Virus record (IMG/VR): IMGVR_UViG_3300042502_001233
Span: 62,001-126,000 of that record
DNA length: 64,000 bases
Strand: one strand, 5' to 3'
A model generated the notes under the pieces. That model did not search any database and was not told where the DNA came from. It saw only the letters and a list, made by a program, of their open reading frames with translations. A program made the position numbers and the translations under genes. Below, piece by piece: positions 17,576 to 54,617 of the stretch. The first letter of the stretch is position 1; each line of letters opens with the position of its first letter.

Positions 17576-19816
17576 TTAATTAAACGTTATTTTAGAAATA
17601 TTATTTTCTTTAACTACAGTAACCACGTTTGTTGACCAATCTTTAACGATATCGTTGTGTGTGATAAAGAAGACGATATCATACATGTCTTTTACTTTAT
17701 CAAACAACAATTTTAGTTTTTCAAGATTCTCTGGAGCCACTTTACCCAACACTTCATCAAACGTGATGAAATTAGGCATAGGTAGTGTAGATAGTTTCCC
17801 TAACACAGCTCTTAAAGCTAGACTGGCAGCAGTTTTTTCTAACCCAGACCCAGATTTTAACAATTTAGAAACACCATCTTTAACTAATAAAAACTGAACA
17901 TCGTTCTTATCATTAATAAATATCTCGATTTCAAAATCTACAACATCTTCTAATAATCTTTGAACTTCTGAATTGATAATTGGGAGAACTGAGCGCAATA
18001 CCAATTTACTAATACCTTTCTTACCAACCAATTCAATGTATATCTTGAATATTTTATCAACTTCCTCTTCTTTTTTTATAGTTTCAATAAGTTTTGTTTT
18101 TATACCAATATGTTCCGCGTTGATTCTTAATTCACTTTGAACTCGTTCGAGACTTCTGATTGTTTCGTCTTTTTTATATTCTTTAACTGAAATATCTGTA
18201 ATAATTTTACTAACAGCTATTTCTACACTACGATTTAACTCTATCGCTTCTAAGTTTAATTTGTATTTTTTCAAATCATTCTTTTTAGCAACAATTTGGT
18301 TTCTTAATCCACCCATTTCAACTTCTAATCTGTCTATATCCAATTCCTTTTTACCAATTGAGTCAGCAATTTTTTTGGTTTCATTTAAACCTTCAAGTTC
18401 TTCAACACTTTTTAAAAGTTTATCAGTAAGTTCTTTTACTTCTTTGTTTATTTTTTCAATCTCAACCTCATGTTTAGCTATATGTGCTGAATTATCAACA
18501 TCATCTAATTTTCTGTTACATGATTGACAAATACCACCAGCAATTAAATCGGATACAACTTTTTTAAGTCTTTTTGATTCGGCTTCTTTAACTGCTTTAT
18601 CCATATTTAATTTACTACCTAATTTTGTCAACTCATGATGTCTATCTTCATCAAATTCAATTTTACCTATCTCTTCGATTTCACTTTTTATAGTTGTTAC
18701 TTTACCACTTAACTCAACACCTTTATCAATGAGTGTTTTAATGTCATCTTCAAGTCTTTGGGGGTTTAATTCTGAAATTGTTACGTCAATTTTCTCTTTG
18801 CTGTTTAAAAGAGCATCTTTTTCAGTTTTTAACTCTTCCAAAGATTGTTTAGTAGTTTCTAAAGTTTCGTTTAAATCACTTTCTAGTTCATTATAGTTCA
18901 CAATTTTTTCATTGTGGTCATCAATCTCTTGACCCAAAGTTATAACGTCGTATTCGTTAGATTTCTTCTTTTTAGAAAATTCATTGTACATCGTTCTAGC
19001 GATTGCTTCTTTCATTTCAAGAACTTCTAAACCAATAAGTCTAGTAAGTATCTTACCAGATTCAGTTGTTGTCAATCCAATCAATTCATCCAAGTTTTTT
19101 TCAGTAGCCAAAACCAACATTTCAAAATCTTTTTCGGTTCCGATGCTTTCTTTTAACTTTTTAGTTGTTTGTTTGGCATCTTCTTCATTTAATTCCTCTT
19201 CTTCACCATCTGGTTGAATTTTATAGTAGTTTACTTTGTTTACAACAGTCCAACCACCACCTTTTTTAGAAGTACGTCTCATTTTTCTTTCAATGATAGT
19301 CTCTTCACCTTCAATTTCAATCATTCCACGAACAACCAACTCATTCTTTTCAGAGTATGTGTTGAATATTTGCTCGTTGGTATCTGTTTTGGTTGTACTA
19401 CCATGAAGCAAAAACTTAATAGCGTCGATTGTAAGCGTTGTATTATGTGATACGATTCCATTGGTATAATATTGATGGACTTCGGCTACTTGAATATCGT
19501 ATAATGTATCTTTTTCTTTTAATAATTCAATAGTAGCAACAGCACTATCACCATCGTTTGTTTGAATCATCTCACCAACTTTTATCTCTTTAAGGACAAC
19601 AAACTCATCATCCGTTTTCTTTAAACGATGATAATCAGCACCTTCAACAAACATTCCGTTTTGAAGTTCACATCTATAAACATCAGCATTTTCTTCTGTA
19701 ATTCCACACCACTCAATGTCTTTATAACCATATGGTGTATCAACTTTAAATCCTAGGTCTCCGTATTTTTGGTAAATATTATTTAATTCACCAATTGTAA
19801 TTTCTTTATTCTCCAT
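17576..19816 (-). CDS. sbcC: SbcC/Rad50 (gp46-like) ATPase, C-terminal fragment preceded by split-intein C part
   Basis: After ...GIVSHN comes TTLTIDAIKF (end of Walker A), coiled coils, CQSC zinc hook, SGSGLEK signature, ITFDEVLG Walker B; likely start MENKEIT at 19816. Confidence 0.9.
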   Translation of the reverse strand: MENKEITIGELNNIYQKYGDLGFKVDTPYGYKDIEWCGITEENADVYRCELQNGMFVEGADYHRLKKTDDEFVVLKEIKVGEMIQTNDGDSAVATIELLKEKDTLYDIQVAEVHQYYTNGIVSHNTTLTIDAIKFLLHGSTTKTDTNEQIFNTYSEKNELVVRGMIEIEGEETIIERKMRRTSKKGGGWTVVNKVNYYKIQPDGEEEELNEEDAKQTTKKLKESIGTEKDFEMLVLATEKNLDELIGLTTTESGKILTRLIGLEVLEMKEAIARTMYNEFSKKKKSNEYDVITLGQEIDDHNEKIVNYNELESDLNETLETTKQSLEELKTEKDALLNSKEKIDVTISELNPQRLEDDIKTLIDKGVELSGKVTTIKSEIEEIGKIEFDEDRHHELTKLGSKLNMDKAVKEAESKRLKKVVSDLIAGGICQSCNRKLDDVDNSAHIAKHEVEIEKINKEVKELTDKLLKSVEELEGLNETKKIADSIGKKELDIDRLEVEMGGLRNQIVAKKNDLKKYKLNLEAIELNRSVEIAVSKIITDISVKEYKKDETIRSLERVQSELRINAEHIGIKTKLIETIKKEEEVDKIFKIYIELVGKKGISKLVLRSVLPIINSEVQRLLEDVVDFEIEIFINDKNDVQFLLVKDGVSKLLKSGSGLEKTAASLALRAVLGKLSTLPMPNFITFDEVLGKVAPENLEKLKLLFDKVKDMYDIVFFITHNDIVKDWSTNVVTVVKENNISKITFN
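19442..19816 (-). mobile_element. Split intein C part (125 aa) of sbcC
   Basis: ITIGEL, EGADYHRL (block B-like His), LYDIQV (block F), YYTNGIVSHN/T (block G, His-Asn followed by Thr). Confidence 0.9.
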
Positions 19817-20021
19817 CTTTTTTATATAAATTAATTTCTTCAATTTCAAATTCAATACCACGAAGTTTATCTTTAGATTCAATACGGTTATTAATTAAAT
19901 CAAACACAGTTTCAATTTGTAAAAAAGGGCTATCGCCACTAATTATTACTAGGTATTGTATTCTTCTATATGATTTTTGTGTATATTTATAAACACCTTT
20001 TTTAATTTTATTTATTTCCAT
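19806..20021 (-). CDS. Small hypothetical protein (71 aa) inside the sbcC interruption
   Basis: Overlaps the endonuclease stop by 14 nt and the IntC start by 11 nt. Confidence 0.55.
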   Translation of the reverse strand: MEINKIKKGVYKYTQKSYRRIQYLVIISGDSPFLQIETVFDLINNRIESKDKLRGIEFEIEEINLYKKDGE

Positions 20022-21024
20022 TTTTTAAAAATTTTTTACATTTATTTATTATCTCTTGTTTGTTTTTTTTATATTCGGAATCCCAAACAACTAAAACTTC
20101 AAAACCTTTATTATTAGCTATTAACATTTTTTGTTTATCTTTATCCCAAATATCTTTAGCTGTTAAGTCTTTTCTAAAAGGGTTTGGATAATCATCTTTA
20201 TCATATTTATTTGGATTACCATGATAATCATCACCATTATACTCAATTATTTTTTTATTTTTTAAGTCAGTAAAATCATATCTATAAAAACCATTATCAT
20301 CAGTTAAAACAAATTCACCACCTTTTTTTGCAAAAAGAAAATAATTAATATCATTAATGTCAACTTTTTCTATTAACGTATAAAACAACTCTTGACTTAC
20401 TTCGGAATAACCAGATTTTAATTTACCATTTTTATAAAGTGTTTTTTGCCATTTTATTTGTCTTTCATTAAACTTAACTAACCCTTCTTCTGAACCATAT
20501 TTTTTAATACAGGTTTTTAAACTAAACGTTTGTTGTCTTTTAGAAACCATTTGTTTACTTTCTTTATCATCAAAACCTTTATTTAACCAATATTGGATAT
20601 TAGCACTTCCAAGTTTACCAGCGGCACTTCTTTTACCTTCTCGTTCTCCCCATTTTTTAGTACCTTCTTTTTCACCAAACCTAGCTATACAACCTCTTAA
20701 AGAAACCATTTTTTGACCTTCAATTTGTAGTATCGCTTCTTCTTCGGTATAACCATTTTTAACCCAATATTCAATATTTACTGGTCTTAAAGTTCTAATG
20801 TGGTCTTCAATTTTGTTTTCATTTAAACCTCTATCTATCCAATATTGTTTTGAATAAGGTGAACCTTTTGGTATTACAATCCCTAAATTTTTTAACCTAC
20901 TAGTTATAACACTAGGGTCAACATTAAATCTTAGTGCTATCTTATTAGTAGATTCAAAATTCTCATTATACAATTTTAACATTATTTTGATTTCATCATC
21001 ACTAAATTCTTTTCTTTTTCCCAT
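20008..21024 (-). CDS. Free-standing Vsr-like (EDxHD/DUF559-type) homing endonuclease with N-terminal HTH and repeated YW..xG motifs
   Basis: IIEYNGDDYHGNP...WDKD..K...GFEVLVVWDSEY; repeats YWIDRG / YWVKNG / YWLNKG and SL..CI..(F/Y)G..EG. Confidence 0.8.
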   Translation of the reverse strand: MGKRKEFSDDEIKIMLKLYNENFESTNKIALRFNVDPSVITSRLKNLGIVIPKGSPYSKQYWIDRGLNENKIEDHIRTLRPVNIEYWVKNGYTEEEAILQIEGQKMVSLRGCIARFGEKEGTKKWGEREGKRSAAGKLGSANIQYWLNKGFDDKESKQMVSKRQQTFSLKTCIKKYGSEEGLVKFNERQIKWQKTLYKNGKLKSGYSEVSQELFYTLIEKVDINDINYFLFAKKGGEFVLTDDNGFYRYDFTDLKNKKIIEYNGDDYHGNPNKYDKDDYPNPFRKDLTAKDIWDKDKQKMLIANNKGFEVLVVWDSEYKKNKQEIINKCKKFLKNGNK

Positions 21025-21055
21025 TTTAACTTTTATATCTATAATTATTATTTAC

Positions 21056-21065
21056 TATAAATATA
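21056..21065 (-). promoter_or_regulatory. Late-type motif TATATTTATA upstream of the sbcC-inserted endonuclease
   Basis: Same core ATTTAT as structural-gene motif. Confidence 0.5.
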
Positions 21066-21100
21066 ACCGTTTAACCAAAAAGGTAAAGACAAAGAAATAA

Positions 21101-21682
21101 TTATTTTAGTTCATCTGGTAAAAAACCTAACTTTTTAATGATTTCATTTTTGTTAAATTGTATATTAACCTTAGTATCAGCTCTAACGCATTTACCACCT
21201 TGGTTAGCTGGAATAGAGTTAACGATAGTTAATCCATTTAAACGGCTAAAAGGTACGTAATTCTGTTCGCCAAAAGATAAGAAGTTATCAATCATAATCC
21301 ATTTGATGGCCCATGATTTATGTTGAATATTGTTTAGGTCAATATTTAGTTCACCGTTAACTCTTTCATCTAATGCAAGTATTCTTTTAAAATCAACATT
21401 TTTGTTATCTCTTTCAATAAGCTCTTTCATAAGGGCTCTTTGATAACTTATGTCCATAATGTTTTCAATACCAGCACCTGTAATCTCAACCATATCGCCT
21501 TTGTCAGTTTTTCTGACTGGACGATAGATTACGTTGATATTGTTTTTGTTAACCCCGTACTTAGTAGCAAAGTAAGTTTTGATTCTATTCTTTGCTTCAC
21601 GACTATAGTTGTGTGGTTGGTCTGACCATTCTACCTTAACTTTAGAATTTGGAGATAAAATTTTCATTTCGTTTTTCATCAT
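21101..21682 (-). CDS. sbcC: SbcC/Rad50 N-terminal fragment ending in split-intein N part
   Basis: IKWIMIDNFLSFGEQN...LNGLTIVNSIPANQGGK (Walker A start), then CVRADTKVNI..., then stop. Confidence 0.9.
   Translation of the reverse strand: MMKNEMKILSPNSKVKVEWSDQPHNYSREAKNRIKTYFATKYGVNKNNINVIYRPVRKTDKGDMVEITGAGIENIMDISYQRALMKELIERDNKNVDFKRILALDERVNGELNIDLNNIQHKSWAIKWIMIDNFLSFGEQNYVPFSRLNGLTIVNSIPANQGGKCVRADTKVNIQFNKNEIIKKLGFLPDELK
21104..21190 (-). mobile_element. Split intein N part (29 aa) of sbcC
   Basis: CVRADTKVNIQFNKNEIIKKLGFLPDELK; block A-like C-x3-DT-x-V immediately after the Walker A Lys. Confidence 0.85.
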
Positions 21683-21696
21683 ATTTTTTTTTATAA

Positions 21697-21704
21697 CAAA
21701 TATA
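21697..21704 (-). promoter_or_regulatory. Bacteroidota-type -7 element (TATATTTG) upstream of sbcC-N
   Basis: Exact TAnnTTTG match. Confidence 0.6.
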
Positions 21705-21779
21705 CGAAATATTTATTAAAAATACAATTAAAATCGTATTTTTTAATAAAACTAGATATTTATAAATAAAAACATTATT

Positions 21780-21950
21780 ATGAGAAAAAAACTAAATGAA
21801 TCAGATAAAAAAGTAAAATTAACCACGACAATAAACCCTAAGCTATATAATATTATATATAATAGAGAAACAAACTTATCAAAATATATTGAAAAATTAG
21901 TTTATAATGATTTAATTAAAAATAACGAAATTGAAACTTTTTATTTATAA
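21780..21950 (+). CDS. Small ribbon-helix-helix-like protein (56 aa; absent from ORF track)
   Basis: MRKKLNESDKKVKLTTTINPKLYNIIYNRETNLSKYIEKLVYNDLIKNNEIETFYL; strand-helix-helix pattern; GATATTTATA at 21755-21764; TAATG overlap with the HNH gene. Confidence 0.6.
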   Translation: MRKKLNESDKKVKLTTTINPKLYNIIYNRETNLSKYIEKLVYNDLIKNNEIETFYL

Positions 21951-22462
21951 TGGGGAAACCAAATCTATATAATACATACGAAGAACGATTGGAAGCTAGG
22001 AGAGAAACGGTAAGAGCTTATTATCAAAGAAATAAAGAAAAATGTGCTGAACGTAAAAAAATTTACAATCAAAAAAATAAAGTTGAATTGCAAAAGAAAA
22101 GAAACGAATATAGAAAAAAAAGAAAAGAAACTGATGAACTATATAAACTAACAAATTCAATTAGACGTAATATAAATAACGCATTTAAACGAAATGGGTA
22201 TAATAAAACATCTAAAACATTTGAGTTATTATCTTGTTCTTTTGAAGAATTCAAAACATATCTTGAATCATCGTGGGAATCATGGATGAACTGGGATAAT
22301 TATGGGTTATATAATGGAAAACCAAATTATGGTTGGGATATTGACCATATTATACCATCTTCTAGTGCAATGACAGAAGAGGAATTAATTAAATTAAACC
22401 ATTTTACTAACCTACAACCACTTTGTAGTTATATTAATAGAAACATAAAAAGGGATTATTAA
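21950..22462 (+). CDS. Free-standing HNH endonuclease
   Basis: GWDIDHIIP...LNHFTNLQPLCSYIN; basic N-terminal helix. Confidence 0.85.
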   Translation: MGKPNLYNTYEERLEARRETVRAYYQRNKEKCAERKKIYNQKNKVELQKKRNEYRKKRKETDELYKLTNSIRRNINNAFKRNGYNKTSKTFELLSCSFEEFKTYLESSWESWMNWDNYGLYNGKPNYGWDIDHIIPSSSAMTEEELIKLNHFTNLQPLCSYINRNIKRDY

Positions 22463-22519
22463 GTTTATACCCAATATACTTTGATTTTAGAGTACTGTGA
22501 AATTAATTGTGTGTCTGTA

Positions 22520-22924
22520 TTACTCACCATATAAATCTTTTTTCTTTTTATTTTTTTCTTGTTCTAATTCTATTTTTAGTTTCTTGTGTTCGATTTCAAG
22601 GTCACCCAACTCTTTTAATGCTTTGTCTTTAGCCTCAGAAGCTAATTTACCGTTTTTGTTTAGTTTATCAATTTCTTTTGTTAGTTTTTGCATTTCTTTG
22701 TTGTCGGAAATAAAAACTTCTTTTTCAACCGTTACTTCCACAATCTTTTCAACCTCTACAATCTTTTCAACAATTTTTTCTTTTTGTTCAAAAGGTGTAG
22801 AACCAAACTTTGTAGCTGTAAAACCTTGTTTTAAACACTTGGTAATAAACTCATCAATATTGGTTATGTTGTTGGCTCTACAGTAATCCCAGATTTCATC
22901 TTTAAGTTCTTTATTCACCTCCAT
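22520..22924 (-). CDS. Hypothetical coiled-coil protein with EKIVE repeats
   Basis: EKIVEKIVEVEKIVEVTVEKEV; DNA repeat caatcttttcaac at 22741 and 22759. Confidence 0.75.
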   Translation of the reverse strand: MEVNKELKDEIWDYCRANNITNIDEFITKCLKQGFTATKFGSTPFEQKEKIVEKIVEVEKIVEVTVEKEVFISDNKEMQKLTKEIDKLNKNGKLASEAKDKALKELGDLEIEHKKLKIELEQEKNKKKKDLYGE

Positions 22925-23141
22925 CTAACAAGCGTGTTACGTCTTCTTGCGTTTGGTGGAACAAACATATCTCTTGTGAGTGTTGGTCCACATATAGCGC
23001 TATAATTGGTTTGTCTACACGATAAATCATACTATCGTTATCACTAGGGTCTAAATACCCAACTTCTCCGTTCACAACTGACCATTCACCCATTTCCTCT
23101 GGTAATCCGTTAATGAACCCTTTTAGTTCGTTTAATGTCAT
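22911..23141 (-). CDS. Hypothetical protein
   Basis: TAATG-coupled to sbcD-C. Confidence 0.7.
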   Translation of the reverse strand: MTLNELKGFINGLPEEMGEWSVVNGEVGYLDPSDNDSMIYRVDKPIIALYVDQHSQEICLFHQTQEDVTRLLDGGE

Positions 23142-23371
23142 TATAAATTTGTTATTACCTCTGTCCCGTTTTCGAGGTCTTCAAGGGATTTTATTTTAAA
23201 TTGATAGTATGGTGATTTGTTATCAACATCGTGCTCTGTAAAGCTCTTAGAATCCAAATCCCACAATAAAAACCCATGTTTGGTTACATTCTCACCAAAG
23301 TTTTGTTGGATAAGACTAGAAGGCATAACAACTGGTATTATTTTTTTAATTTTAATTTTCTTTTTTTCCAT
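23141..23371 (-). CDS. sbcD: SbcD/Mre11 (gp47-like) nuclease, C-terminal fragment (76 aa, likely start MEKKK)
   Basis: IPVVMPSSLIQQNFGENVTKHGFLLWD corresponds to the (Y/M)xGSxxQxxFGE...KG region that follows motif V in SbcD. Confidence 0.8.
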   Translation of the reverse strand: MEKKKIKIKKIIPVVMPSSLIQQNFGENVTKHGFLLWDLDSKSFTEHDVDNKSPYYQFKIKSLEDLENGTEVITNL

Positions 23372-24281
23372 ATTCTTTAATTTTATTAAATAAAACATAC
23401 TTAAAATTTTTCTTTTTGATATCCGACTCCCAAAACCTAACCAAATTATAAGATTTGTCTTTAGCTAATTTATTTTTAAATTTATCATTTTCGACATTTA
23501 TTTGTTGTGTTTCAGTTAATATATCACTTTCATTATATTTTATTGGATTAACATGCCAATAATCACCATCAGCTTCTATTAACAAATTAAAATCGATTAG
23601 ATAAAAATCATAAGTTTTAAATTTATTTTCGTCATAATAAACATCATATTGTGTTTCAAATTTAACATTATTATCCATTAATAACTTACCAATTTTAACT
23701 TCAATACCGCTTTTTTTCATTTTTTTTAACCCATCTCTCATTAATTCAAATGACGTTTTACCGTATTTTTCTAAACATATGTTTTCCCTATTTTTTATTT
23801 GTTTTTCTAAAGTCAATATACATTCAACACCATATCGTTTTAAATTACTATTAATTCTTTTGTTATTAGATGTTTCATTAGTCCCCATCCAAAAACCATT
23901 ATCCTCAAAGAATTTTTCTTGACCAATTTTTACTTTTTCTTTATGTTCTTCGGTTTCCCATAATTTTTTAACCCTTTCAGAATTCCATTTTTTCCATTCA
24001 TCAGTATGTTTAATGTTATAAGCTGGGTTACCTTCTTTAAGATAAAGTTCTTTTTGGTGAGAATCTTTACAAACTCTAGAACAGTATTTTTTACCATTAT
24101 CTATTTTATTTGGTAATACTTCAAACTCTTTATCACATAATAAACAATTAATTTTAACTCTATCAACTTTTAACTTTTTATATCCAATATGTTGACATTC
24201 TATTGAACAATAAACTTTATTTTTAGTTTCTTTTTGACAATTTTTACAGTTATTCATTTCTCTAAATTTTTGTTGTATCAT
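23352..24281 (-). CDS. Free-standing Vsr-like (EDxHD/DUF559-type) homing endonuclease with N-terminal Cys-rich zinc-binding repeats
   Basis: CKNC...YCSIEC, CLLC...YCSRVC; YDFYLIDFNLLIEADGDYWHVNP...ND.FK...YNLVRFWESDI. Confidence 0.85.
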   Translation of the reverse strand: MIQQKFREMNNCKNCQKETKNKVYCSIECQHIGYKKLKVDRVKINCLLCDKEFEVLPNKIDNGKKYCSRVCKDSHQKELYLKEGNPAYNIKHTDEWKKWNSERVKKLWETEEHKEKVKIGQEKFFEDNGFWMGTNETSNNKRINSNLKRYGVECILTLEKQIKNRENICLEKYGKTSFELMRDGLKKMKKSGIEVKIGKLLMDNNVKFETQYDVYYDENKFKTYDFYLIDFNLLIEADGDYWHVNPIKYNESDILTETQQINVENDKFKNKLAKDKSYNLVRFWESDIKKKNFKYVLFNKIKEYGKKEN

Positions 24282-24289
24282 TATTTATT

Positions 24290-24298
24290 AATAAATAC
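24290..24298 (-). promoter_or_regulatory. Late-type motif GTATTTATT upstream of the sbcD-inserted endonuclease
   Basis: Same core as the structural-gene motif, within a 39-nt intergenic gap. Confidence 0.5.
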
Positions 24299-24320
24299 AA
24301 CAACAAAACTAAAAAGATAA

Positions 24321-25001
24321 TTATTCATCTAAAACCCACCCAATTTTTTCATATTCATATAATTCTTCTTCATATATTTCTTTAGTTTCCTTAAAAATTA
24401 AAACACCTCTTTTATGGATATCACCGCACATAACCATGTCACAACCTTTAAATATATCTAAATTATAACCATGTTCTATTTCGTAACCAATATCTGTAGT
24501 TGAACCAACTAATGGACCATGAAATAAACCTATATACGTTTTATCTTCACCAAACTGTACTCTAGCTGCTTCAATATCTGGCCTTGAATTACCTTCAAAA
24601 ATTGAATATACACACCAAACAACGTTGTCATCCAAATAACATTTAGATTCTTTGAAATAGTTTATTTCTTTGTCTGGAAGGAATTGTACCATTGGTGTGA
24701 TTGAATCCATACGGTCTTTGTTATTCTCTAACAAATCGTGGTTTCCAGCTATCATAACCACTGGGGCTATTTCTTCTAGTTTTCTAAGAAACCACGTACC
24801 AAGCAATAATTGCTCGTTTGAAATCACAATCTTTTGGTGAACCAAGTCACCAGCCACTACGATTCTAATTTCTTCTCTTTTGTAGTCAACCAATAAATCG
24901 GTTAAATCTGCCATAAGCGTTTTAAACACATCCAAGTACTCATCGTGCATTCGAAAAGTTCTTATGTGTATATCAGCTAAGTGAACTATCTTCTTTATCA
25001 T
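24321..25001 (-). CDS. sbcD: SbcD/Mre11 nuclease, N-terminal fragment
   Basis: All five metallophosphoesterase motifs: ADIH, AGD, GNHD, FHG, GDIH; ends in an acidic tail and a stop. Confidence 0.9.
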   Translation of the reverse strand: MIKKIVHLADIHIRTFRMHDEYLDVFKTLMADLTDLLVDYKREEIRIVVAGDLVHQKIVISNEQLLLGTWFLRKLEEIAPVVMIAGNHDLLENNKDRMDSITPMVQFLPDKEINYFKESKCYLDDNVVWCVYSIFEGNSRPDIEAARVQFGEDKTYIGLFHGPLVGSTTDIGYEIEHGYNLDIFKGCDMVMCGDIHKRGVLIFKETKEIYEEELYEYEKIGWVLDE

Positions 25002-25248
25002 TTTCTTCGTTGTATTTGTTTAATTTATAAGTGTATTTATCCATAATACCTATTCTATCTAATAATTCTTCTCTATCCATTAATAAAATAGATGCGATGC
25101 TTTCATGTAATAAAGCTACAGCGATAGCTTTGTCTGTACCATGTTTAATCTCATGAAGCAACGCTTCATGAAATTCATAATAACCATTATGAACTATTTT
25201 GTATAATTGTTCGTCGTTAAACGGTTCGTATAAACTTCTATTATACAT
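24973..25248 (-). CDS. Hypothetical protein
   Basis: Overlaps both neighbours in operon. Confidence 0.65.
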   Translation of the reverse strand: MYNRSLYEPFNDEQLYKIVHNGYYEFHEALLHEIKHGTDKAIAVALLHESIASILLMDREELLDRIGIMDKYTYKLNKYNEENDKEDSSLS

Positions 25249-26023
25249 TTTTCATAAGATTATAGTGGTGCATCTCAATAAGTTTTTTGGCCTCATGTTT
25301 AAGATACATTATTTGTATTTTTTGAAATGTCATCGTTGTTTTATCCCAATACCCAATACATATTTGTCTACATTTTCTGTGTGGAAATTCTAACTCATAC
25401 ATGTAAGCATATACACTCAACTGCAATGTATAAATTGACCATTGACATGCTTGTAAGTGGTCAAATGGTTTAAACAATGTTTCGTTTCCGAATGGGTTAA
25501 AGAAGTTGAATTCTCTGTTTGTTTTCCAATCCCAAACATCAAAAAAAGTGTCATCTATGTCAATAACTAAATCTGACATACCAGCCAACTCATATTGTTC
25601 AGCAAACATAATACGTTCTGGCCACATTGCAATACCTTCATCTATTTTTAGAGCTTCAAACCCGTCAATAACTTTCTTTTCAAATTGTCCATCTTCATCA
25701 TCTTTTGGGAAATACCATTTGTTGGCTAACAAATAACGTTCTACAATGTCGTGAACTTTGGTACCATATATATTGGCTTCGTCGTTAAGCATTTGCCAAT
25801 AATCTAATATTTGTTGTTGGTTTAAACCTATATAACGTTCTTGTTTGACTGTGTCTAATTGATTGACAATAGCGGCCGATACAGCCTCAGCGTCAAAGTG
25901 TGGTTCGATTGATGTAAGTGTAGTAGTAACCGACTTGTAAATTTTACCAGTGGTCCTATGATGATATTTGTGTTCTATCGGTTCCAGATATACTGGACCT
26001 TCCCATAATTTTGCTTTACTCAT
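25241..26023 (-). CDS. PD-(D/E)xK superfamily exonuclease (RecB/Cas4-like fold)
   Basis: SVTTTL, GTKVH, PERIMF...LAGMSDL, DWKT, YTLQLSVY motifs. Confidence 0.8.
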   Translation of the reverse strand: MSKAKLWEGPVYLEPIEHKYHHRTTGKIYKSVTTTLTSIEPHFDAEAVSAAIVNQLDTVKQERYIGLNQQQILDYWQMLNDEANIYGTKVHDIVERYLLANKWYFPKDDEDGQFEKKVIDGFEALKIDEGIAMWPERIMFAEQYELAGMSDLVIDIDDTFFDVWDWKTNREFNFFNPFGNETLFKPFDHLQACQWSIYTLQLSVYAYMYELEFPHRKCRQICIGYWDKTTMTFQKIQIMYLKHEAKKLIEMHHYNLMKNV

Positions 26024-26096
26024 TTATAATATTTTTTAATACAAATATACTACAAAATTGTTTATTTTGCAACTTTTATATGAATTATTTACTTGG

Positions 26097-27035
26097 TTAA
26101 TCTTTAAGTTTATGCGCGGTTTTTAAAAGTTTAACAATACCTTGGTTACCTAGTCTTTCGTATATCTTAGATGGGTCAAAACCTTCTGGTGGTCTAACTA
26201 TCCTAACTCTACCTTCCAAATCATAATTATCCAACTGCCTATATAGGTTTTGAGCATCTTGATAAGCGTCATCATCCAACACAACAACAACAAAAGACTT
26301 GGCTTTTTCTTGTAATAAATCAAATAATTTGTCAGAAACATATTTACCCAGTAGAGGTATTGAGTTCGGGGTTACTATATGGTCTGTGACACCTTCAACC
26401 AAATAGATTGTTGCGTCCCAATTAACTCTACCTTCATTGAAAACTATCTCTTGTTTTTCAGCGTCTGGGTTTAAGTATTTTATTTTTGTATATTTTTTGT
26501 CAAACCATCTGGCCACAAAATAGTTTAAGTTGTCGTCAACATCAAATGATGGAACGACAACTCTATTGTAAAAGTCTCCTTTGATTGTGTATCCTATGTC
26601 AAAATCTTTGATTATTTTATCTGTAATACCACGTTGATATAAATAATCTTTGGCTATTTCTGATTTGTAGTCTTTAAATGTACAGTCAGCTAGTTTCTTA
26701 TAACCCTCTGGTAGTTTTACAACAACTTTCTTCTGTTCTCTGTCTTTAAACTCATCAGGTTTTAATAAGAAATAATCCGCTAAATTTTTTTTGGTACCGT
26801 ATTTTTTGATTAGTTTTGAAATGGGTCCATGCATGTGGTTTGTATCGTGACAAACCCAACAGTTATAAACACCTTTGTCGTAATTAAGTTCTAGGTTTCC
26901 TTTTCCGTCACCGTTGACCAAACCTTTTTCAGCTGAACAAGCTGGACAATCAAAAGCGATTTGCCCAGTATCCTCATTATGCTTTCTAGGGTCACCTAAA
27001 AATGATTCGAATATGTCTACCAAATATAAACTCAT
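26097..27035 (-). CDS. DNA primase (zinc-binding domain + TOPRIM)
   Basis: CPAC...CWVC; RGI; FYNRVVVP; KYLN; VEGVTD; VLDDDA; DP. Confidence 0.9.
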   Translation of the reverse strand: MSLYLVDIFESFLGDPRKHNEDTGQIAFDCPACSAEKGLVNGDGKGNLELNYDKGVYNCWVCHDTNHMHGPISKLIKKYGTKKNLADYFLLKPDEFKDREQKKVVVKLPEGYKKLADCTFKDYKSEIAKDYLYQRGITDKIIKDFDIGYTIKGDFYNRVVVPSFDVDDNLNYFVARWFDKKYTKIKYLNPDAEKQEIVFNEGRVNWDATIYLVEGVTDHIVTPNSIPLLGKYVSDKLFDLLQEKAKSFVVVVLDDDAYQDAQNLYRQLDNYDLEGRVRIVRPPEGFDPSKIYERLGNQGIVKLLKTAHKLKD

Positions 27036-28984: not shown

Positions 28985-29590
28985 TTATAAATTATTTCTT
29001 TTTACATCTCTGTTAATTTTGCTACAAAGAGGTTGAAGGTTAAAATAATGATTAAGTTTTATTATATCTGTTTCATTTATTGCAGATGATAAAGGAATTA
29101 TGTGGTCAATATCCCAACCAAACCCTTCTGTTCCATTGTATAAACCATGGTTATCCCAAGTCATCCAAGATTCAAATTTAGATTCCAAATGAGTTTTAAA
29201 TTCCTCAAATGAACAACCTAATATGTTTGCCGTTTTAGATGTTTTTTTAAATTTATATTTTTTAAACGAATTAGAAATTAGCGTTCTAATATTTTGAGTT
29301 AATTTATATAAACTGTCTATTTTTTTCCTATTTATTCTATAAATATTATTATTTATAATCTCTTTTTCTTTATTTTTTAAATAGTATTTTTTCCTATTTT
29401 CTTTAATTTTATTTGGATTATTAATATTATATGTTTTAACGTATTGAATAGGTTTATCTGGGTTTTTTTCTATCCAACTTCTTTTTTGTTTGTAAACTTT
29501 TTCTTTATTATTAACCACATACTTCTTTCTAGCTAATTTTTTAGCTTCTTTTTTTTCAGCTTCTGTATGATATTTTTTTACTCGACCCAT
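28985..29590 (-). CDS. Free-standing HNH endonuclease (paralog of 21950-22462)
   Basis: TSKT..ILGCSFEEFK..LES....WM.WDN.GLYNG...GWDIDHIIP...LNH..NLQPLCS.INR shared with the other copy; likely start MGRVKK. Confidence 0.85.
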   Translation of the reverse strand: MGRVKKYHTEAEKKEAKKLARKKYVVNNKEKVYKQKRSWIEKNPDKPIQYVKTYNINNPNKIKENRKKYYLKNKEKEIINNNIYRINRKKIDSLYKLTQNIRTLISNSFKKYKFKKTSKTANILGCSFEEFKTHLESKFESWMTWDNHGLYNGTEGFGWDIDHIIPLSSAINETDIIKLNHYFNLQPLCSKINRDVKRNNL

Positions 29591-29591
29591 A

Positions 29592-31718
29592 TTAAAAATC
29601 AAGAGATAATTCTATCATTATTGTGTTTCCATCACTTAAAGGAACTGGGTTAGATAGTTTACCAATACACACAAGGTTTTTACTACTATCATAAATCCCA
29701 ACTTCTGAAACTTTTATAGTTGGCGGGTTAGTTGCTGCATCAGTACTTCTACTTGGATTAGATGTAGTGTCGAATTGACTCGCATTAACTCTAATGTCGA
29801 ATATTGTTTTATATATTGTTGCTCCAATATATGTTGTTAAATTACCATAGAAAAATCTTTCGTCACCAAATTGTAAATCTGTCGGTGATGTGTTTGGTGT
29901 CATATTCAAAATACTAATAAGGTCAAAAGTTGTTGAACCAGTAGCTTTGTTTTTATCCAAGATAAATCCAATTGTTGATGAAGTTTGGTTTTCTAATAGT
30001 TTTGGGTCGATTGTTTCTCCAGCAACGCTAGTTATAGCTGTTGTTGTAAAATCAGCAACTTTCCAACTATCTGAACTTGGTCTCATACCTGAATCACCTA
30101 CTATTTGATAAACTAATTTGAATTTATCCGCATGGAAACCTAAACCATCATAACCAGCATCCTCAATTTTACGCATGTATGGTAATAAATCAGTTTCTTT
30201 AATTCTAAAAGCAATATCTTTAGATGATTGTGTATTGTTGGTTATTTTTATATATTTTTGACATGGCATAGCTGTTTGTAACCCAGCATTTGCGTTGTTT
30301 TCTAATATGTAAGTTAAATACATTGTCTCACCAACATTCAAAGCACCGCTAGACGTTGTGCCAGTAGGTGCGTTAAGAACCGCTGCTAATTCTGGAAGTG
30401 TCCAGTTTCTGTTTGATTTATAAGATATTGCTGACACAATTTCATCATCAGTAAACACAGCTATTTTTAATTGTGGATATATTTTACCAACAACTTGTGG
30501 TATTGATGGGGTAATATATTCTGGGTCTTCAATCAAGTCTATATATTCTAAATCAGTAGTGCCTAGTGTTTGAGTCGCACCAGTTGCTATAAACGCCATA
30601 CCTTGAGAAGTACCACTGGCTGTTGATGCACTATACTTATGATACATCATGTCAGGGAAATATACTTTAAAATATTTACCATTAAGTGTATCGGTATAGA
30701 AAAACTCACCATACAAATTAGAAATTGTATTATTTGTATAATGAAGGATAGATATTGATTTGCTTATTTCATCTGCATAACTTAAACCAACACCGTCACA
30801 ATTTGTTGTACCTGTAGTTGCTGAAGAATCACATCCAAATCTTAAGAAAGGATATTTTTGACCTAAATAAGTGTAAGAACCGAATTTAGTGTAATCTTCG
30901 TAAGTCGTACCAGTTATACCAGCTGGTGATTCACACCATACGTTATTCATGTTCCATACTGGTACATCATCACAAGTTACGTTGTTTGCAGAATCAAAAG
31001 ACAAAGTTCCAGTGTCCCAATATGCTGTTGTGTTACCAGTCGCTATTGTATCCCAAACTTCACCACCTCTATACACAATAATTTGTGAGTTAGATGAGTC
31101 GCCACTATAATTAGGTAAATTTCTATCAACAGTTACTGATGTACTAGTTTTTGTTTTAACTTTAAACCATAAATTAGGTAAAGCTCTAGTGTTTTCGTTT
31201 ACAATTAAACCACCACAATCATCATTAGCAACTTTTATTAAAATTATATCACCAACACTAAACCCAGAGGTTGCAGTTAAATTTAAAACAGTACCACCAG
31301 TCAACACACTATTTGCTATGTTTTCTGTGTATGCTATGTAAGTACTACCAGTTAAAGTTGTGAATACATTACCATTACGCATAAAAAAACCTCTTTCATC
31401 AGCAGCATTATTTACAACCGCTTTAACTACGTTAAGAACTCCAGCATCAATAGTTTGTAATGGGTCTGTAGTTGTTGATGGTTTGATATAGTATTGAATG
31501 TTAGGTTCTCTATCTACTGGTCTTAAAACCATACTAGATGCTGATAAAGTCACGTTAGCTGAGTTGGTATCAACAACTTGCTCTCTTTCGTAATTAAGTT
31601 CAGAATCACCAATAGCCCAAAAATTAAAATTTAATCTACCTAATGCTAATTGTTCTCTTCCAGTTTGTGTTAGTTTTATACTAACGAACGGACTTGTGCT
31701 TTTTATAATGTAACTCAT
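29592..31718 (-). CDS. Putative tail/baseplate protein (DUF3751-like termini)
   Basis: KLTQTGREQL, WAIGDSE.NY, VSEVGIYDSSKNLVCIGK; GATATTTATA motif at 31723-31732. Confidence 0.6.
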   Translation of the reverse strand: MSYIIKSTSPFVSIKLTQTGREQLALGRLNFNFWAIGDSELNYEREQVVDTNSANVTLSASSMVLRPVDREPNIQYYIKPSTTTDPLQTIDAGVLNVVKAVVNNAADERGFFMRNGNVFTTLTGSTYIAYTENIANSVLTGGTVLNLTATSGFSVGDIILIKVANDDCGGLIVNENTRALPNLWFKVKTKTSTSVTVDRNLPNYSGDSSNSQIIVYRGGEVWDTIATGNTTAYWDTGTLSFDSANNVTCDDVPVWNMNNVWCESPAGITGTTYEDYTKFGSYTYLGQKYPFLRFGCDSSATTGTTNCDGVGLSYADEISKSISILHYTNNTISNLYGEFFYTDTLNGKYFKVYFPDMMYHKYSASTASGTSQGMAFIATGATQTLGTTDLEYIDLIEDPEYITPSIPQVVGKIYPQLKIAVFTDDEIVSAISYKSNRNWTLPELAAVLNAPTGTTSSGALNVGETMYLTYILENNANAGLQTAMPCQKYIKITNNTQSSKDIAFRIKETDLLPYMRKIEDAGYDGLGFHADKFKLVYQIVGDSGMRPSSDSWKVADFTTTAITSVAGETIDPKLLENQTSSTIGFILDKNKATGSTTFDLISILNMTPNTSPTDLQFGDERFFYGNLTTYIGATIYKTIFDIRVNASQFDTTSNPSRSTDAATNPPTIKVSEVGIYDSSKNLVCIGKLSNPVPLSDGNTIMIELSLDF

Positions 31719-52421: not shown

Positions 52422-53519
52422 TTAAGTTGAGCAACCGAAACATTCAAACTGGCTATCTTTTGGTTTTTCAGGTTGATTTGCAATTTGGCTACTAGCTAGT
52501 TTTGAATTTGCTTCTAATTTTGATTTTGTTCTAGTATAATATACACCAGTCTTTAGACCACCTTTCCAAGCATACATAAGTGCACTAGCTATTTTACCGT
52601 ATTTTGCATCAGAATGATATACGTTTAATGATTGTGATTGGTCAACATATTTGTTTCTGATGATTGATAAATCTAACAATACTCTTTGAGAAATTTCCCA
52701 AACATCTTTGTATCTAAATCTTATTTCTTCTGGTATTTCCACAATGTTTTGGATACTACCTTGGTTTTTAATGACTTTGTCAATAATAGTTGAAGTCCAA
52801 AGATTATTTTCAATTAGTTCATTAACCAAATATTTGTTAACAACCAAAAACTCACCTTGACCTACTCTTCTTGTAAATAAGTTAGCTGTGGCTGGTTCAA
52901 AAGATTCAAATACACCTAACAAAATTGCTGAAGACGCTGTTGGCATCAATCCTAACAATAAACTGTTGTACATTGGAATTGCTTCTCCTTCTGCTTTTGG
53001 TGACCACCCTTCAATATATGTTTCACCTTTTGAATAACGACTGCCTTCCCACGCTGGATAGTTTTCACCTTTTTCTTCAGCCAATAACATAGATTCAATA
53101 ACAGCTGTTTTATACATTGTTTCGAATATATCGTTATTCCATTGTTTAGCTTCTTCACTTTCAAAAGCAATTTTCTTTTTAGCAAAGAAATCAGCCAACC
53201 CAGCAACACCAATAGCCAAAGCTCTTTGGTCCATTCCAGCTTTCTCACTCCAACTGTCACTCCATTTGTTTTTGTCGATTACTTGGTTAAGCGCTCTAAC
53301 CAAAACTCTAGTTGTCTGTGCAATTGTTTCCAATGTATCGTGTTCGGCCAAATTAACTGATGCCAACGTACATTGTGGTGTGTATTTTGGTTTAGACGCT
53401 TGCATTACCTCAATACAATTGTGCACCAATATATCATTAGCGAAAAAATTATGATTATCTTTTATTGTTAAATCATAAACTGGTAACTTTGTTTCTATTT
53501 TTTTTATTTTAATCCCCAT
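52422..53519 (-). CDS. nrdA: Ribonucleotide reductase class Ia alpha subunit, C-terminal fragment preceded by split-intein C part
   Basis: ...LVHN then CIE (catalytic Cys/Glu), CTLASVNL, RALAIGVAGL, MPTASS, DQSQS, KTGVYYTR, C-terminal CFGC. Confidence 0.95.
   Translation of the reverse strand: MGIKIKKIETKLPVYDLTIKDNHNFFANDILVHNCIEVMQASKPKYTPQCTLASVNLAEHDTLETIAQTTRVLVRALNQVIDKNKWSDSWSEKAGMDQRALAIGVAGLADFFAKKKIAFESEEAKQWNNDIFETMYKTAVIESMLLAEEKGENYPAWEGSRYSKGETYIEGWSPKAEGEAIPMYNSLLLGLMPTASSAILLGVFESFEPATANLFTRRVGQGEFLVVNKYLVNELIENNLWTSTIIDKVIKNQGSIQNIVEIPEEIRFRYKDVWEISQRVLLDLSIIRNKYVDQSQSLNVYHSDAKYGKIASALMYAWKGGLKTGVYYTRTKSKLEANSKLASSQIANQPEKPKDSQFECFGCST
53418..53519 (-). mobile_element. Split intein C part (34 aa) of nrdA
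   Basis: MGIKIKKIETKLPVYDLTIKDNHNFFANDILVHN/C; blocks F and G. Confidence 0.95.
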
Positions 53520-53520
53520 A

Positions 53521-54561
53521 TTAATTTATTATTTCATTTATATTTGTTAATATTTTTTGTAGATAAATGTATTTTATATTATTTTCACTACAATATTTTT
53601 TAGCCGCTTTAATTTTCATTTCTTCATTTATTTTTCCTTTTTCACCTCTAATAAACCCTTTAATTTCTAATAATATTTTATGACCTTCATATTCAATAAG
53701 AAAATCTGGCAAATAAAGAGTACCATCTTCTTTTTGTATATAAAACGATTCATAACTATATTTAATTCCATTTAGTTCTAAAAATTCTATTGTCTTTAAC
53801 TCCCAAGAACTTCTATATCTAACAATAGTTTTATTTAAACAATTTTTAACTTTAATAAAACCAGTTTTAAAAAACTTTGTTTTACCCATATTTTCATTTC
53901 TAACAATACTAATACTTGATATTATGGACATCATTTCTGGATAAATTTTTTCCACATTTTCATCAGTTATTACAACATTTTTAAGTTTATCTCTAAAATT
54001 CAAATACGTTGATTCATCTAAATATTTATCAGATTTTAAAAATTTTTTAAGTTTTTTTATTTTAAAGTCTTTTGATTTTCTATTATTAGAATTAATTAAT
54101 TTATATAATTCTTTTATTTCACTATCTGTCTTATATAAAACATCTATTTTTTTATTTCTTAAAACCTTTATCTTAAAATCAATACTAGAATTTTGTTTTC
54201 TTTTTGTTTCTCTAAAATTATCACCTCTATTAATACCCTTCATTTTAATCTTCATATTTTCTGAATGTTCTGGTCTTAATTTATTTCTAAAACTAGAACC
54301 TTTCATAAAATTAGTTAAATTATCAGGCCAACCAAATCTACTACCTTTCCATATTTTTAAATTATCGTTTTTAGAATGTTTATTTTTAAAATCATTAAAA
54401 GTTAAAATATTATCTAGATATAAGTTTTTTAAAGCTTTGTATTTTTCATCATTACCATTTGTTATTTTTGTAATATAATTTATTAATTCAATTTCAAATA
54501 AATTAATAAAACATTCGTTATTTATTAAATCTTTTAATTTTGTTTGTTTTTTTATTATCAT
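53521..54561 (-). CDS. Free-standing TnsA-like PD-(D/E)xK homing endonuclease
   Basis: YRSSWE...YSYE......YLPDFLI....LLEIKG; GATATTTATT at 54575-54584. Confidence 0.8.
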   Translation of the reverse strand: MIIKKQTKLKDLINNECFINLFEIELINYITKITNGNDEKYKALKNLYLDNILTFNDFKNKHSKNDNLKIWKGSRFGWPDNLTNFMKGSSFRNKLRPEHSENMKIKMKGINRGDNFRETKRKQNSSIDFKIKVLRNKKIDVLYKTDSEIKELYKLINSNNRKSKDFKIKKLKKFLKSDKYLDESTYLNFRDKLKNVVITDENVEKIYPEMMSIISSISIVRNENMGKTKFFKTGFIKVKNCLNKTIVRYRSSWELKTIEFLELNGIKYSYESFYIQKEDGTLYLPDFLIEYEGHKILLEIKGFIRGEKGKINEEMKIKAAKKYCSENNIKYIYLQKILTNINEIIN

Positions 54562-54617
54562 AATCAGTTTTTCTAATAAATATCTAAAATTATTATAAAA
54601 ACCAATTTATGTATAGG

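What the first reader, a model, noticed from the sequence alone, without database searches (positions are those of the whole stretch)
23141..25001. sbcD split in two by an endonuclease with no intein: halves carry charge-complementary tails
The N gene holds all five phosphoesterase motifs and ends GDIHKRGVLIF-KETKEIYEEELYEYEKIGWVLDE-stop (9 acidic versus 3 basic residues in the last 23). The C gene starts MEKKKIKIKKI (6 Lys) and then resumes the conserved IPVVMPSSLIQQNFGE...KHG region that completes the nuclease fold. There is no Cys/Ser-start block A, no His-Asn end and no room for an intron core. Inference: the enzyme reassembles non-covalently through an acidic/basic peptide clasp. The hexapeptide IKIKKI also begins the nrdA IntC, which hints that the clasp could be a relic of split-intein association strands, although K/I-rich matches are common in AT-rich DNA. 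With sbcC also split, the SbcCD complex would be built from four gene products by two different rejoining chemistries.
Basis: partly seen in the sequence, partly recalled or inferred. Interest (0 to 1): 0.88.

Follow-up and report, generated by a model that had tools for sequence, protein, structure and literature searches.

The report
Phage sbcD split by homing endonuclease
A giant phage's DNA-repair nuclease gene (sbcD/Mre11) is cut into two genes by a selfish endonuclease gene, an arrangement already published in 2009; the two "charged tails" are the halves of a small structural module that is uninterrupted in related, unsplit enzymes.

Summary
On the minus strand lie an sbcD N half (24321-25001, 226 aa, all five phosphoesterase motifs), a free-standing endonuclease gene (23352-24281) and an sbcD C half (23141-23371, 76 aa). 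There is no intein and no intron. The tail charges are as stated.

The arrangement is not new. Dassa et al. 2009 (PMC2677866) described an SbcD-like gene fractured by a Vsr-like homing endonuclease. It had no intein, about 25 and 9 extra residues at the break, and an endonuclease/downstream-gene overlap.

The tails are not an invented clasp or a split-intein relic. Together they form a roughly 33-residue helix plus beta-hairpin module between GDIH and SSLIQQNFGE. Close relatives (302-303 aa) and distant ones, including about 1090-aa SbcD-SbcC fusions, carry it uninterrupted.

AlphaFold2 models a natural fusion at pLDDT 96.5 and puts the break in the hairpin turn. Most close relatives are 270 aa and lack the module. 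Mosaic identity and a tree show that module halves plus endonuclease entered such alleles repeatedly as one cassette. Decay forms also exist: endonuclease-free split genes, remnants and re-fused scars.

Non-covalent reassembly by strand pairing is plausible but untested.

The parts
24321..25001 (-). sbcD/Mre11-type nuclease, N half (226 aa plus stop). It carries motifs I-V: DIH, GDLVH, GNHD, FH, GDIH.
   Evidence: PF00149, 1e-10; phrog_100 SbcD-like; invariant motif columns; TIGR00619 sbcd, 1.6e-7, below cut-off.
24324..24392 (-). N tail, 23 residues (KETKEI...GWVLDE). In the model of a natural fusion, the corresponding segment forms the end of a strand, an acidic helix and the first hairpin strand.
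   Evidence: E200-211, H212-220, E224-227 in the L026 protein; dN/dS mostly below 1.
24343..24600 (-). Imported upstream flank (co-conversion tract). It is 67-77% identical to near-isogenic 270-aa alleles over 24421-24600, against a 90-98% background. It is 95-100% identical to the otherwise about 80%-identical L004.
   Evidence: (sliding identity).
24282..24320 (-). 39-nt spacer between the N-half stop and the endonuclease start. It holds no RNA family match and no terminator-like site.
23352..24281 (-). Free-standing homing endonuclease gene (309 aa). It has N-terminal Cys-rich repeats and a C-terminal Vsr-like (EDxHD-type) nuclease domain.
   Evidence: PvuRts1I-like_N, 1.2e-4; phrog_9084 homing endonuclease; TIGR00632 Vsr, 6.6e-4, spanning model positions 18-119 of 119; invariant D225, E236, H243, D266; best PDB fold matches Vsr 1cw0 and I-Bth0305I 3r3p.
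23367..23723 (-). Vsr-like nuclease domain of the endonuclease (about residues 187-305).
   Evidence: (pLDDT 83-94 over most of it).
23352..23371 (-). 20-nt overlap. The C-half start codon and its first codons lie inside the 3' end of the endonuclease ORF.
   Evidence: The same feature is reported for the published SbcD-like locus.
23141..23371 (-). sbcD C half (76 aa plus stop). It carries SSLIQQNFGE...HG and the last strands of the fold. The ATG at 23371 is the conserved start; the upstream ATG at 23398 is not conserved in other loci.
   Evidence: (invariant Glu; near-invariant S, Q, Q, G, H, G).
23339..23371 (-). C tail, 11 residues (MEKKKIKIKKI). It is the second hairpin strand and continues into the core strand IPVVMPSS.
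   Evidence: (E233-244 in the fusion).

Best explanation
The window comes from a roughly 362-kb uncultivated phage contig, IMGVR_UViG_3300042502_001233. Its Mre11/SbcD-type nuclease gene has been fractured by a free-standing Vsr-like (EDxHD-type) homing endonuclease gene.

The break sits in the turn of a beta-hairpin. That hairpin belongs to a helix-hairpin module of about 33 residues, lying between motif V (GDIH) and the conserved SSLIQQNFGE strand. The module was not made by the split, because other SbcD and SbcD-SbcC proteins carry it uninterrupted.

In this phage group the ordinary allele is 270 aa and has no module. The two module halves, the stop codon, the endonuclease gene and the new start codon travel together as one homing cassette. 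The cassette is copied into module-less alleles by break repair, together with a stretch of upstream flank.

After invasion the two halves are translated separately; the C-half start lies inside the endonuclease's 3' end. The following step is inferred. The halves reassemble without a covalent bond. The Lys/Ile-rich first strand of the C half pairs with the strands of the N tail next to its acidic helix. That pairing restores the hairpin and the last strands of the nuclease fold.

The cassette later decays. The endonuclease can be lost while the genes stay split, or deletions can re-fuse the gene and leave different scars.
For: Shown:
- Gene layout and tail sequences.
- The Mre11/SbcD fold of a natural fused relative. 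The AlphaFold2 model has pLDDT 96.5 and pTM 0.92. Its top PDB matches are Mre11 and SbcD structures (5dny, 3av0, 4tug, 6s6v) at E about 1e-9.
- The same model reads strand 200-211, helix 212-220, strand 224-227, turn 228-232 (the lowest-confidence block, 87) and strand 233-244. The split point maps to that turn.
- Uninterrupted modules with the same pattern occur in 302/303-aa close relatives and in 33-49%-identical proteins. At least 11 of the 150 best cluster representatives carry one, mostly about 1090-aa SbcD-SbcC fusions.
- Of 77 sbcD loci compared (71 from the viral-contig scan plus fetched contigs; some are duplicates), 59 carry the 270-aa allele without the module.
- Window against near-isogenic 270-aa alleles L077/L078 is 90-98% identical, but 67-77% in the 180 nt upstream of the cassette. 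Window against the more distant L004 is 95-100% in the same tract.
- In a tree of residues 1-150, split and module-bearing alleles nest separately inside well-supported 270-aa clades. At least 8 changes are forced.
- Cassette and host similarities disagree. L014 against L063 gives tails 77-79% and core 56-64%. Window against L014 gives tails 42-54% and core 79-81%.
- The endonuclease has the conserved E/D/H/D residues, and its predicted nuclease domain best matches Vsr and I-Bth0305I.
- Decay series. L012/L013 are split with no endonuclease (TAA, 4 nt, ATG). L073 keeps about 30 endonuclease codons. L004 joins exactly at an AAAAAAT microhomology. L005, L026, L001 and P0110 carry other scars.
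- L007/L008 carry a different, TnsA-like endonuclease at the same site.
- The same split, with the endonuclease or its remnant, occurs in an SbcD-SbcC fusion gene in L081/L083.
- Tails are under purifying selection. The acidic N tail (net -4 to -7) and basic C tail (+3 to +6) recur in divergent split alleles.
- Published precedent exists.
Against: - Reassembly of the halves was not tested.
- Homing activity and the endonuclease's target site are inferred from population patterns only.
- The direction of evolution for the uninterrupted modules is not proven. Some or all could be healed scars, because a split also occurs in the SbcD-SbcC fusion lineage.
- The Vsr profile match is below the curated cut-off, and PDB sequence searches found nothing.
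- No expression data are available.
Confidence: 0.72

Rival explanations
1. The module originated within the mobile cassette: read-through of the N half into inserted DNA, plus a new start for the C half. It was later shaped by selection into a clasp. On this view all uninterrupted modules in unsplit proteins are secondary, healed fusions.
For: - Close-relative fused alleles have different junctions and nest inside 270-aa clades.
- L004 is clearly derived from a window-like cassette.
- The C-tail start is encoded inside the endonuclease ORF.
- The split also occurs in the SbcD-SbcC fusion lineage.
Against: - Distant unsplit carriers (33-40% identity) have modules about as diverged as the rest of the protein. 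Their loop lengths vary, with 43-56 residues between the motifs.
- The module is modelled as a well-packed element at high confidence.
- This origin would need many independent in-frame healings across deep lineages.
Confidence: 0.15
2. One reading: the tails are extra residues added to hold the halves together as an acidic/basic clasp, possibly a relic of split-intein association strands.
For: - Charge complementarity is real and recurs across split alleles.
- Two true split inteins lie in the same window.
- IKIKKI is shared with the nrdA C-intein.
Against: - The same segments are continuous in unsplit, intein-free homologs.
- There is no nucleophile at the start of the N tail, no His-Asn at the end of the C tail, and no Cys/Ser/Thr after it.
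- Healed alleles keep the tails in the mature protein.
- The shared hexapeptide is a Lys/Ile strand in 30% G+C DNA.
Confidence: 0.05
3. The halves are rejoined at the RNA or translation level, by a self-splicing intron, trans-splicing, or ribosomal bypass or frameshift.
For: None was found. In the endonuclease-free split allele L012, only 4 nt separate the stop from the start, so a frameshift is conceivable there.
Against: - No intron family was found, even at E up to 10.
- About 950 nt of protein-coding DNA lies between the halves in the window.
- The tails are conserved as protein.
- The start codon of the C half is conserved in all split loci.
Confidence: 0.02
4. The split inactivated sbcD. 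The halves are decaying pseudogene pieces, or only the N half still works.
For: All metal-binding motifs are in the N half.
Against: - Both halves are intact in every complete split locus, across 53-92% identity.
- dN/dS is far below 1.
- The C half holds a family-invariant Glu and near-invariant residues.
- The split persists with intact ORFs after endonuclease loss.
Confidence: 0.05

Closest known systems
SbcD-like fractured gene from Lake Gatun metagenome (Dassa, London, Stoddard, Schueler-Furman, Pietrokovski 2009, NAR 37:2560; PMC2677866)
   Same: [quoted passage not shown] There is no split intein. About 25 extra C-terminal and 9 extra N-terminal residues sit at the break and were reported as absent from unsplit SbcD-like proteins. 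The endonuclease's 3' end overlaps the downstream ORF.
   Different: The published locus was a single metagenomic assembly. Its supplementary alignment is not held here, so sequence identity to this window could not be checked.

The paper states that the extra residues are absent from SbcD-like proteins. Here they are found uninterrupted in some unsplit homologs. An allele series is also documented: 270-aa, split, endonuclease-free split, remnant and re-fused forms.
Aeromonas phage Aeh1 nrdA split by the mobE homing endonuclease gene (work cited as refs 22-23 in PMC2677866)
   Same: A free-standing homing endonuclease gene splits an essential phage enzyme gene, without an intein or intron. The two products reassemble into an active enzyme. 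The endonuclease and the downstream ORF overlap.
   Different: The host gene (ribonucleotide reductase) and the endonuclease family (HNH type) differ. Function of the split enzyme was shown experimentally there and not here.
Aeromonas phage 25 DNA polymerase gp43 split by a GIY-YIG endonuclease gene (cited as refs 20-21 in PMC2677866)
   Same: A phage replication or repair enzyme is fractured by a free-standing endonuclease gene into two separately translated subunits.
   Different: The host gene and the endonuclease family differ.
I-Bth0305I, prototype of the EDxHD (Vsr-like) homing endonucleases (Taylor et al. 2011, PMC3239194; PDB 3r3p)
   Same: The endonuclease here has the conserved Glu/Asp/His/Asp residues. 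Its predicted nuclease domain matches 3r3p (TM 0.74 on the target) and Vsr 1cw0 best among all PDB chains.
   Different: I-Bth0305I is encoded inside a group I intron in recA, whereas this one is free-standing. The N-terminal DNA-binding part here is a set of Cys-rich repeats that was poorly modelled. No activity data are available.
Fractured genes with split inteins (same paper), as in this window's sbcC and nrdA
   Same: Same genomic layout: host N part, free-standing endonuclease gene, host C part.
   Different: Those halves carry intein pieces and are expected to be ligated covalently. In sbcC the extein junction GGK|TT matches unsplit relatives exactly. The sbcD halves have no intein features.

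Membership tests
Mre11/SbcD nuclease (calcineurin-like metallophosphoesterase) | Phosphoesterase motifs I-V (DxH, GD, GNH[DE], H, GxH) | tested here: met
   PF00149 at E 1e-10 on the N half. D, GD, GNHD, H and H are invariant columns across 80 homologs.
Mre11/SbcD nuclease (calcineurin-like metallophosphoesterase) | Mre11/SbcD three-dimensional fold | tested here: met
   Tested on the natural fused relative L026 (64-70% identical), not on the window's two pieces. The model has pLDDT 96.5. The top 47 PDB matches are all Mre11 or SbcD, best E 1.1e-9, TM 0.5-0.62.
Mre11/SbcD nuclease (calcineurin-like metallophosphoesterase) | Curated SbcD family score (NCBIfam TIGR00619 / NF041754) | tested here: not met
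   TIGR00619 scored 31.4 bits against a cut-off of 77.65. This is a divergent short (270-aa) phage form, so I file it as Mre11/SbcD-type by fold and motifs, not as an equivalog.
Mre11/SbcD nuclease (calcineurin-like metallophosphoesterase) | Partner SbcC/Rad50-type ATPase encoded nearby | tested here: inconclusive
   The downstream gene (786-791 aa when unsplit) has a GGKTT P-loop and long charged, Glu/Lys-rich stretches by eye, but no Pfam hit. Distant relatives are about 1050-1100-aa proteins with the SbcD domain at the N terminus.
Mre11/SbcD nuclease (calcineurin-like metallophosphoesterase) | Nuclease activity of the reassembled halves | not testable with these tools
   This needs expression and assay.
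Intein-less gene fractured by a free-standing homing endonuclease (SbcD-like case of Dassa et al. 2009) | N and C parts of one enzyme as separate ORFs with an endonuclease ORF between them, on the same strand | tested here: met
Intein-less gene fractured by a free-standing homing endonuclease (SbcD-like case of Dassa et al. 2009) | Extra residues at the break (about 25 upstream and 9 downstream), and the endonuclease's 3' end overlapping the downstream ORF | tested here: met
   There are 23-24 and 10-11 residues relative to 270-aa alleles. The overlap is 20 nt.
EDxHD / Vsr-like homing endonuclease | Conserved Glu, Asp, His, Asp catalytic residues | tested here: met
   D225, E236, H243 and D266 are invariant in 7 relatives down to 23% identity.
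EDxHD / Vsr-like homing endonuclease | Vsr-like nuclease fold | tested here: met
   The predicted domain has pLDDT 83-94 over most of it. Its best PDB matches are Vsr 1cw0 (E 1.7e-4) and I-Bth0305I 3r3p (TM 0.74). The Vsr sequence profile scored only E 6.6e-4, below cut-off.
EDxHD / Vsr-like homing endonuclease | Site-specific cleavage of the endonuclease-free allele, and homing | not testable with these tools
   Only indirect evidence is available: a co-conversion-like mosaic, scattered distribution on the host tree, and cassette/host incongruence.
Split intein | Cys/Ser at the first residue of the N piece; His-Asn at the end of the C piece, followed by Cys/Ser/Thr | tested here: not met
   The N tail begins Lys-Glu-Thr. 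The C tail ends Lys-Lys-Ile, followed by Ile-Pro. The tails remain in unsplit relatives. By contrast, the window's sbcC and nrdA pieces do show these features.
Group I / group II intron | Ribozyme core detectable by covariance model | tested here: not met
   No hit at gathering score in the window. Only three noise hits at E 7-8 in 23000-24700. L012 has 4 nt between the halves.

The most novel reading that the evidence does not exclude
The helix-hairpin module may act as a portable complementation adaptor that the endonuclease cassette carries with it. When the cassette homes into a module-less 270-aa sbcD, it installs the two interlocking strands that let the broken enzyme reassemble. This would be a chemistry-free counterpart of the intein or intron that usually mitigates endonuclease insertions, and selection would act on the selfish element to keep it.
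Probability: 0.3. Interest if true: 0.6.

Novelty: already known. Interest (0 to 1): 0.3.

Why it matters
The split sbcD with a Vsr-like endonuclease and no intein is a published arrangement, so the finding is not a discovery.

The re-analysis adds a population view. It shows one endonuclease cassette in every stage of its life cycle: invasion of intact alleles, replacement by another endonuclease, loss with the gene left split, and re-fusion with scars. It also shows that the 'extra' residues are a real structural module that hitch-hikes with the element.

This gives a concrete, testable case of how a gene can be broken into subunits and stay functional. It also corrects the published statement that the extra residues are absent from unsplit SbcD-like proteins.

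Tried and rejected
- Near-identity DNA search of 19000-27000 against the GenBank phage collection found no match. A protein search there found only 33-35%-identical jumbo-phage relatives.
- An intron was looked for and not found with Rfam.
- An intein was rejected by reading the junctions and by the unsplit relatives that keep the tails.
- The promoter and terminator scan was uninformative: 18 promoter-like sites against 15.6 expected, and no terminator.
- PDB sequence searches with the endonuclease, alone and as a 4-sequence profile, found nothing. Only the fold search worked.
- The first MAFFT alignment that mixed halves with full-length proteins misplaced the tails. I read the tails from motif-anchored extracts instead.
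- L065 was counted as 'split' in the tree, but it is a contig-end truncation.
- The supplement of the 2009 paper is not held.
A natural fused relative was folded instead.
Full report
**What is there.**
- Three consecutive minus-strand genes occupy 23141-25001.
- The first gene (24321-25001, 226 aa) is a calcineurin-like phosphoesterase (PF00149, E 1e-10; PHROG 'SbcD-like subunit'). It ends 29 residues after motif V (GDIH). Its 23-residue tail has 9 acidic and 3 basic residues.
- After a 39-nt spacer comes a 309-aa ORF (23352-24281).
- The third gene starts at the ATG at 23371, inside the last 20 nt of the second ORF. It reads MEKKKIKIKKI and then IPVVMPSSLIQQNFGE...HG.

**No RNA-level or protein-splicing element.**
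- Rfam finds nothing in the window at gathering score. In 23000-24700 at E up to 10 it finds only three noise hits.
- The junction residues lack every intein hallmark. The window's sbcC and nrdA pieces do show them: Cys at the start of the N pieces, and His-Asn followed by Thr or Cys at the end of the C pieces. The sbcC extein junction GGK|TT matches unsplit relatives exactly.

**The middle gene is a Vsr-like homing endonuclease.**
- Its C-terminal 120 residues give weak but full-length matches to Vsr (TIGR00632, E 6.6e-4) and to the Vsr-fold PvuRts1I N domain.
- Asp225, Glu236, His243 and Asp266 are invariant in relatives down to 23% identity. These correspond to the composite EDxHD motif.
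- An AlphaFold2 model is confident only in this domain. Its best matches among all PDB chains are Vsr (1cw0, 1vsr) and the I-Bth0305I catalytic domain (3r3p, TM 0.74).

**It is already in the literature.**
- Dassa et al. 2009 (PMC2677866) report a Lake Gatun metagenome locus. Two ORFs similar to the halves of an SbcD-like exonuclease flank a Vsr-like ORF, with no split intein.
- They also report 25 extra C-terminal and nine extra N-terminal residues at the break, and overlap of the endonuclease's 3' end with the downstream ORF.
- The window shows the same features. I could not compare sequences, because the supplement is not held.

**What the tails are.**
- The database search with the N half returned hundreds of close relatives. 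Among the best 120, about 64 are N halves ending in the same motif (...L..Y...GW.[IVL]D.). About 52 are unsplit 270-aa proteins in which GDIHKRQSFNHKG runs straight into IIIAYPSSLIQQNFGE with no charged segments.
- A few unsplit relatives contain the tails as one continuous stretch:
  - L026/L027 (302 aa) read ...KIGWVVDD-DKNSA-KINIKKVIP...
  - P0107 (303 aa) reads ...NKWTVEQ-QEINGF-VKVKKNIP....
- A search of 1.8 billion cluster representatives found uninterrupted inserts of the same pattern in proteins only 33-49% identical. Most of them are about 1090-aa SbcD-SbcC fusions. An example is P0215, with an acidic helix, GWKVIEV, a turn, then RRYRIRKRMP.
That condition is met.

**Structure.**
- AlphaFold2 on the natural 304-aa fusion from L026, with 80 homologs, gives pLDDT 96.5 and pTM 0.92. 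Its best PDB matches are all Mre11 or SbcD.
- The insert reads as a long strand (200-211), a helix (212-220), a short strand (224-227), a five-residue turn (228-232, the least confident block at 87) and a long strand (233-244) running into the core.
- Mapped onto the window, the N tail supplies the strand end, the acidic helix and the GWVLDE strand. The C tail supplies the Lys/Ile strand. The gene is cut in the turn.
- I infer from the order of these elements that the C-tail strand lies between two N-half strands. I could not inspect coordinates, and no multimer prediction was available.

**The module travels with the endonuclease.**
- Of 77 sbcD loci compared (71 from the viral-contig scan plus fetched contigs; some are duplicates), 59 are 270-aa alleles.
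- The window's own genome has near-isogenic relatives with the 270-aa allele (L077, L078). Identity is 90-98% along the gene and its neighbours, but drops to 67-77% in the 180 nt just upstream of the cassette.
- The otherwise about 80%-identical L004 is 95-100% identical to the window in that same tract.
- In a maximum-likelihood tree of residues 1-150, which lie outside the tract, split and module-bearing alleles sit separately inside well-supported 270-aa clades. At least eight changes are forced by supported branches. One 'split' row, L065, is really a truncated contig.
- Tail and endonuclease similarities disagree with host-gene similarities in both directions.
- This is the expected signature of homing with co-conversion of flanking sequence. 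Cleavage itself was not tested.

**Life cycle of the cassette.**
- L014/L015, L063 and L009 carry the same endonuclease.
- L007/L008 carry a different, TnsA-like endonuclease at the identical site.
- L012/L013 have lost the endonuclease completely but remain split: TAA, four bases, then ATG.
- L073 keeps only about the last 30 endonuclease codons.
- L004 (285 aa) equals the window with everything between two AAAAAAT repeats removed, so the helix remains and the hairpin is gone.
- L005, L026, L001-3 and P0110 are re-fused with other junctions.
- L081 and L083 show the same split, with the endonuclease or its remnant, in an SbcD-SbcC fusion gene. There the C piece is longer than 800 aa.

**Are the halves functional?**
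- Both ORFs are intact in every complete split locus.
- The C half contains a family-invariant Glu and several near-invariant residues.
- Tail dN/dS is mostly 0.1-0.4, against about 0.1-0.2 for the core.
- The acidic N tail (net -4 to -7) and basic C tail (+3 to +6) recur in alleles as distant as 45% identity.
- The split also survives loss of the endonuclease.
- These facts argue for two working polypeptides that associate. They do not prove it.

**The IKIKKI hint.**
- The hexapeptide occurs twice in the six-frame translation. The second copy is at the nrdA C-intein start.
- The equivalent strand in intein-free unsplit SbcD relatives reads KINIKKV, VKVKKN or VYKVLKK.
- The match is therefore best explained as two Lys/Ile beta-strands in 30% G+C DNA, not as shared descent.

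**Open point.**
- Did the module exist before the endonuclease arrived, or did it arise in the cassette and later heal into contiguous inserts?
- I favour the first. The reasons are the deep, diverged, length-variable modules in SbcD-SbcC fusions and the well-packed model.
- The split in a fusion-gene lineage keeps the second alive, at about 15%.

**Verdict.**
A non-covalent two-piece enzyme is likely. An invented or intein-derived clasp is not supported.
- The arrangement is already known. Interest is modest.

Noticed in passing
window 17576-21682 (- strand): sbcC is split at its P-loop (GGK|TT) by a split intein with an unusually short N piece (about 29 residues, starting with Cys) and a long C piece ending in His-Asn. 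A second Vsr/DUF559-like endonuclease gene lies between them at 20008-21024. Unsplit relatives (L004, L077; 786-791 aa) read NQGGKTTLTID across the junction.
   Followed up: partly
window 21683-22519: An insert of about 830 bp lies between the 134-aa gene and sbcC and is absent from L004. It carries plus-strand ORFs, including an HNH/endonuclease VII-like gene at 21950-22462 (phrog_1035). This is a third endonuclease gene within 4.5 kb.
   Followed up: partly
window 28985-29602 (- strand): A 205-aa ORF with the same DIDHIIP...N HNH-like C terminus as 21950-22462 sits between two large Asn/Thr/Ser-rich, probably structural, genes. Those genes are adjacent in L004 and L077.
   Followed up: no
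window 52422-56099 (- strand): nrdA is fractured by a split intein. The N piece is at the end of 54618-56099 and the C piece at the start of 52422-53519. A TnsA-like PD-(D/E)XK endonuclease gene lies between them at 53521-54561.
   Followed up: partly
L007 6720-7625 and L008: A different endonuclease occupies exactly the same sbcD break point as the window's Vsr-like one. It has a TnsA-like nuclease domain and Cys-rich N-terminal repeats. This suggests endonuclease replacement, or nuclease-domain swapping on a shared DNA-binding part.
   Followed up: partly
protein family: The SbcD of this phage group is unusually short (270 aa). Many of its 35-45%-identical relatives are single polypeptides of about 1040-1100 aa with the SbcD domain at the N terminus, apparently SbcD-SbcC fusions.
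   Followed up: no
L081 1138-2471: In one SbcD-SbcC lineage the gap between the halves also holds a 155-aa ORF and a DNA methyltransferase-like gene broken into two ORFs, upstream of the endonuclease. The break point therefore acts as a landing pad for further cargo.
   Followed up: no
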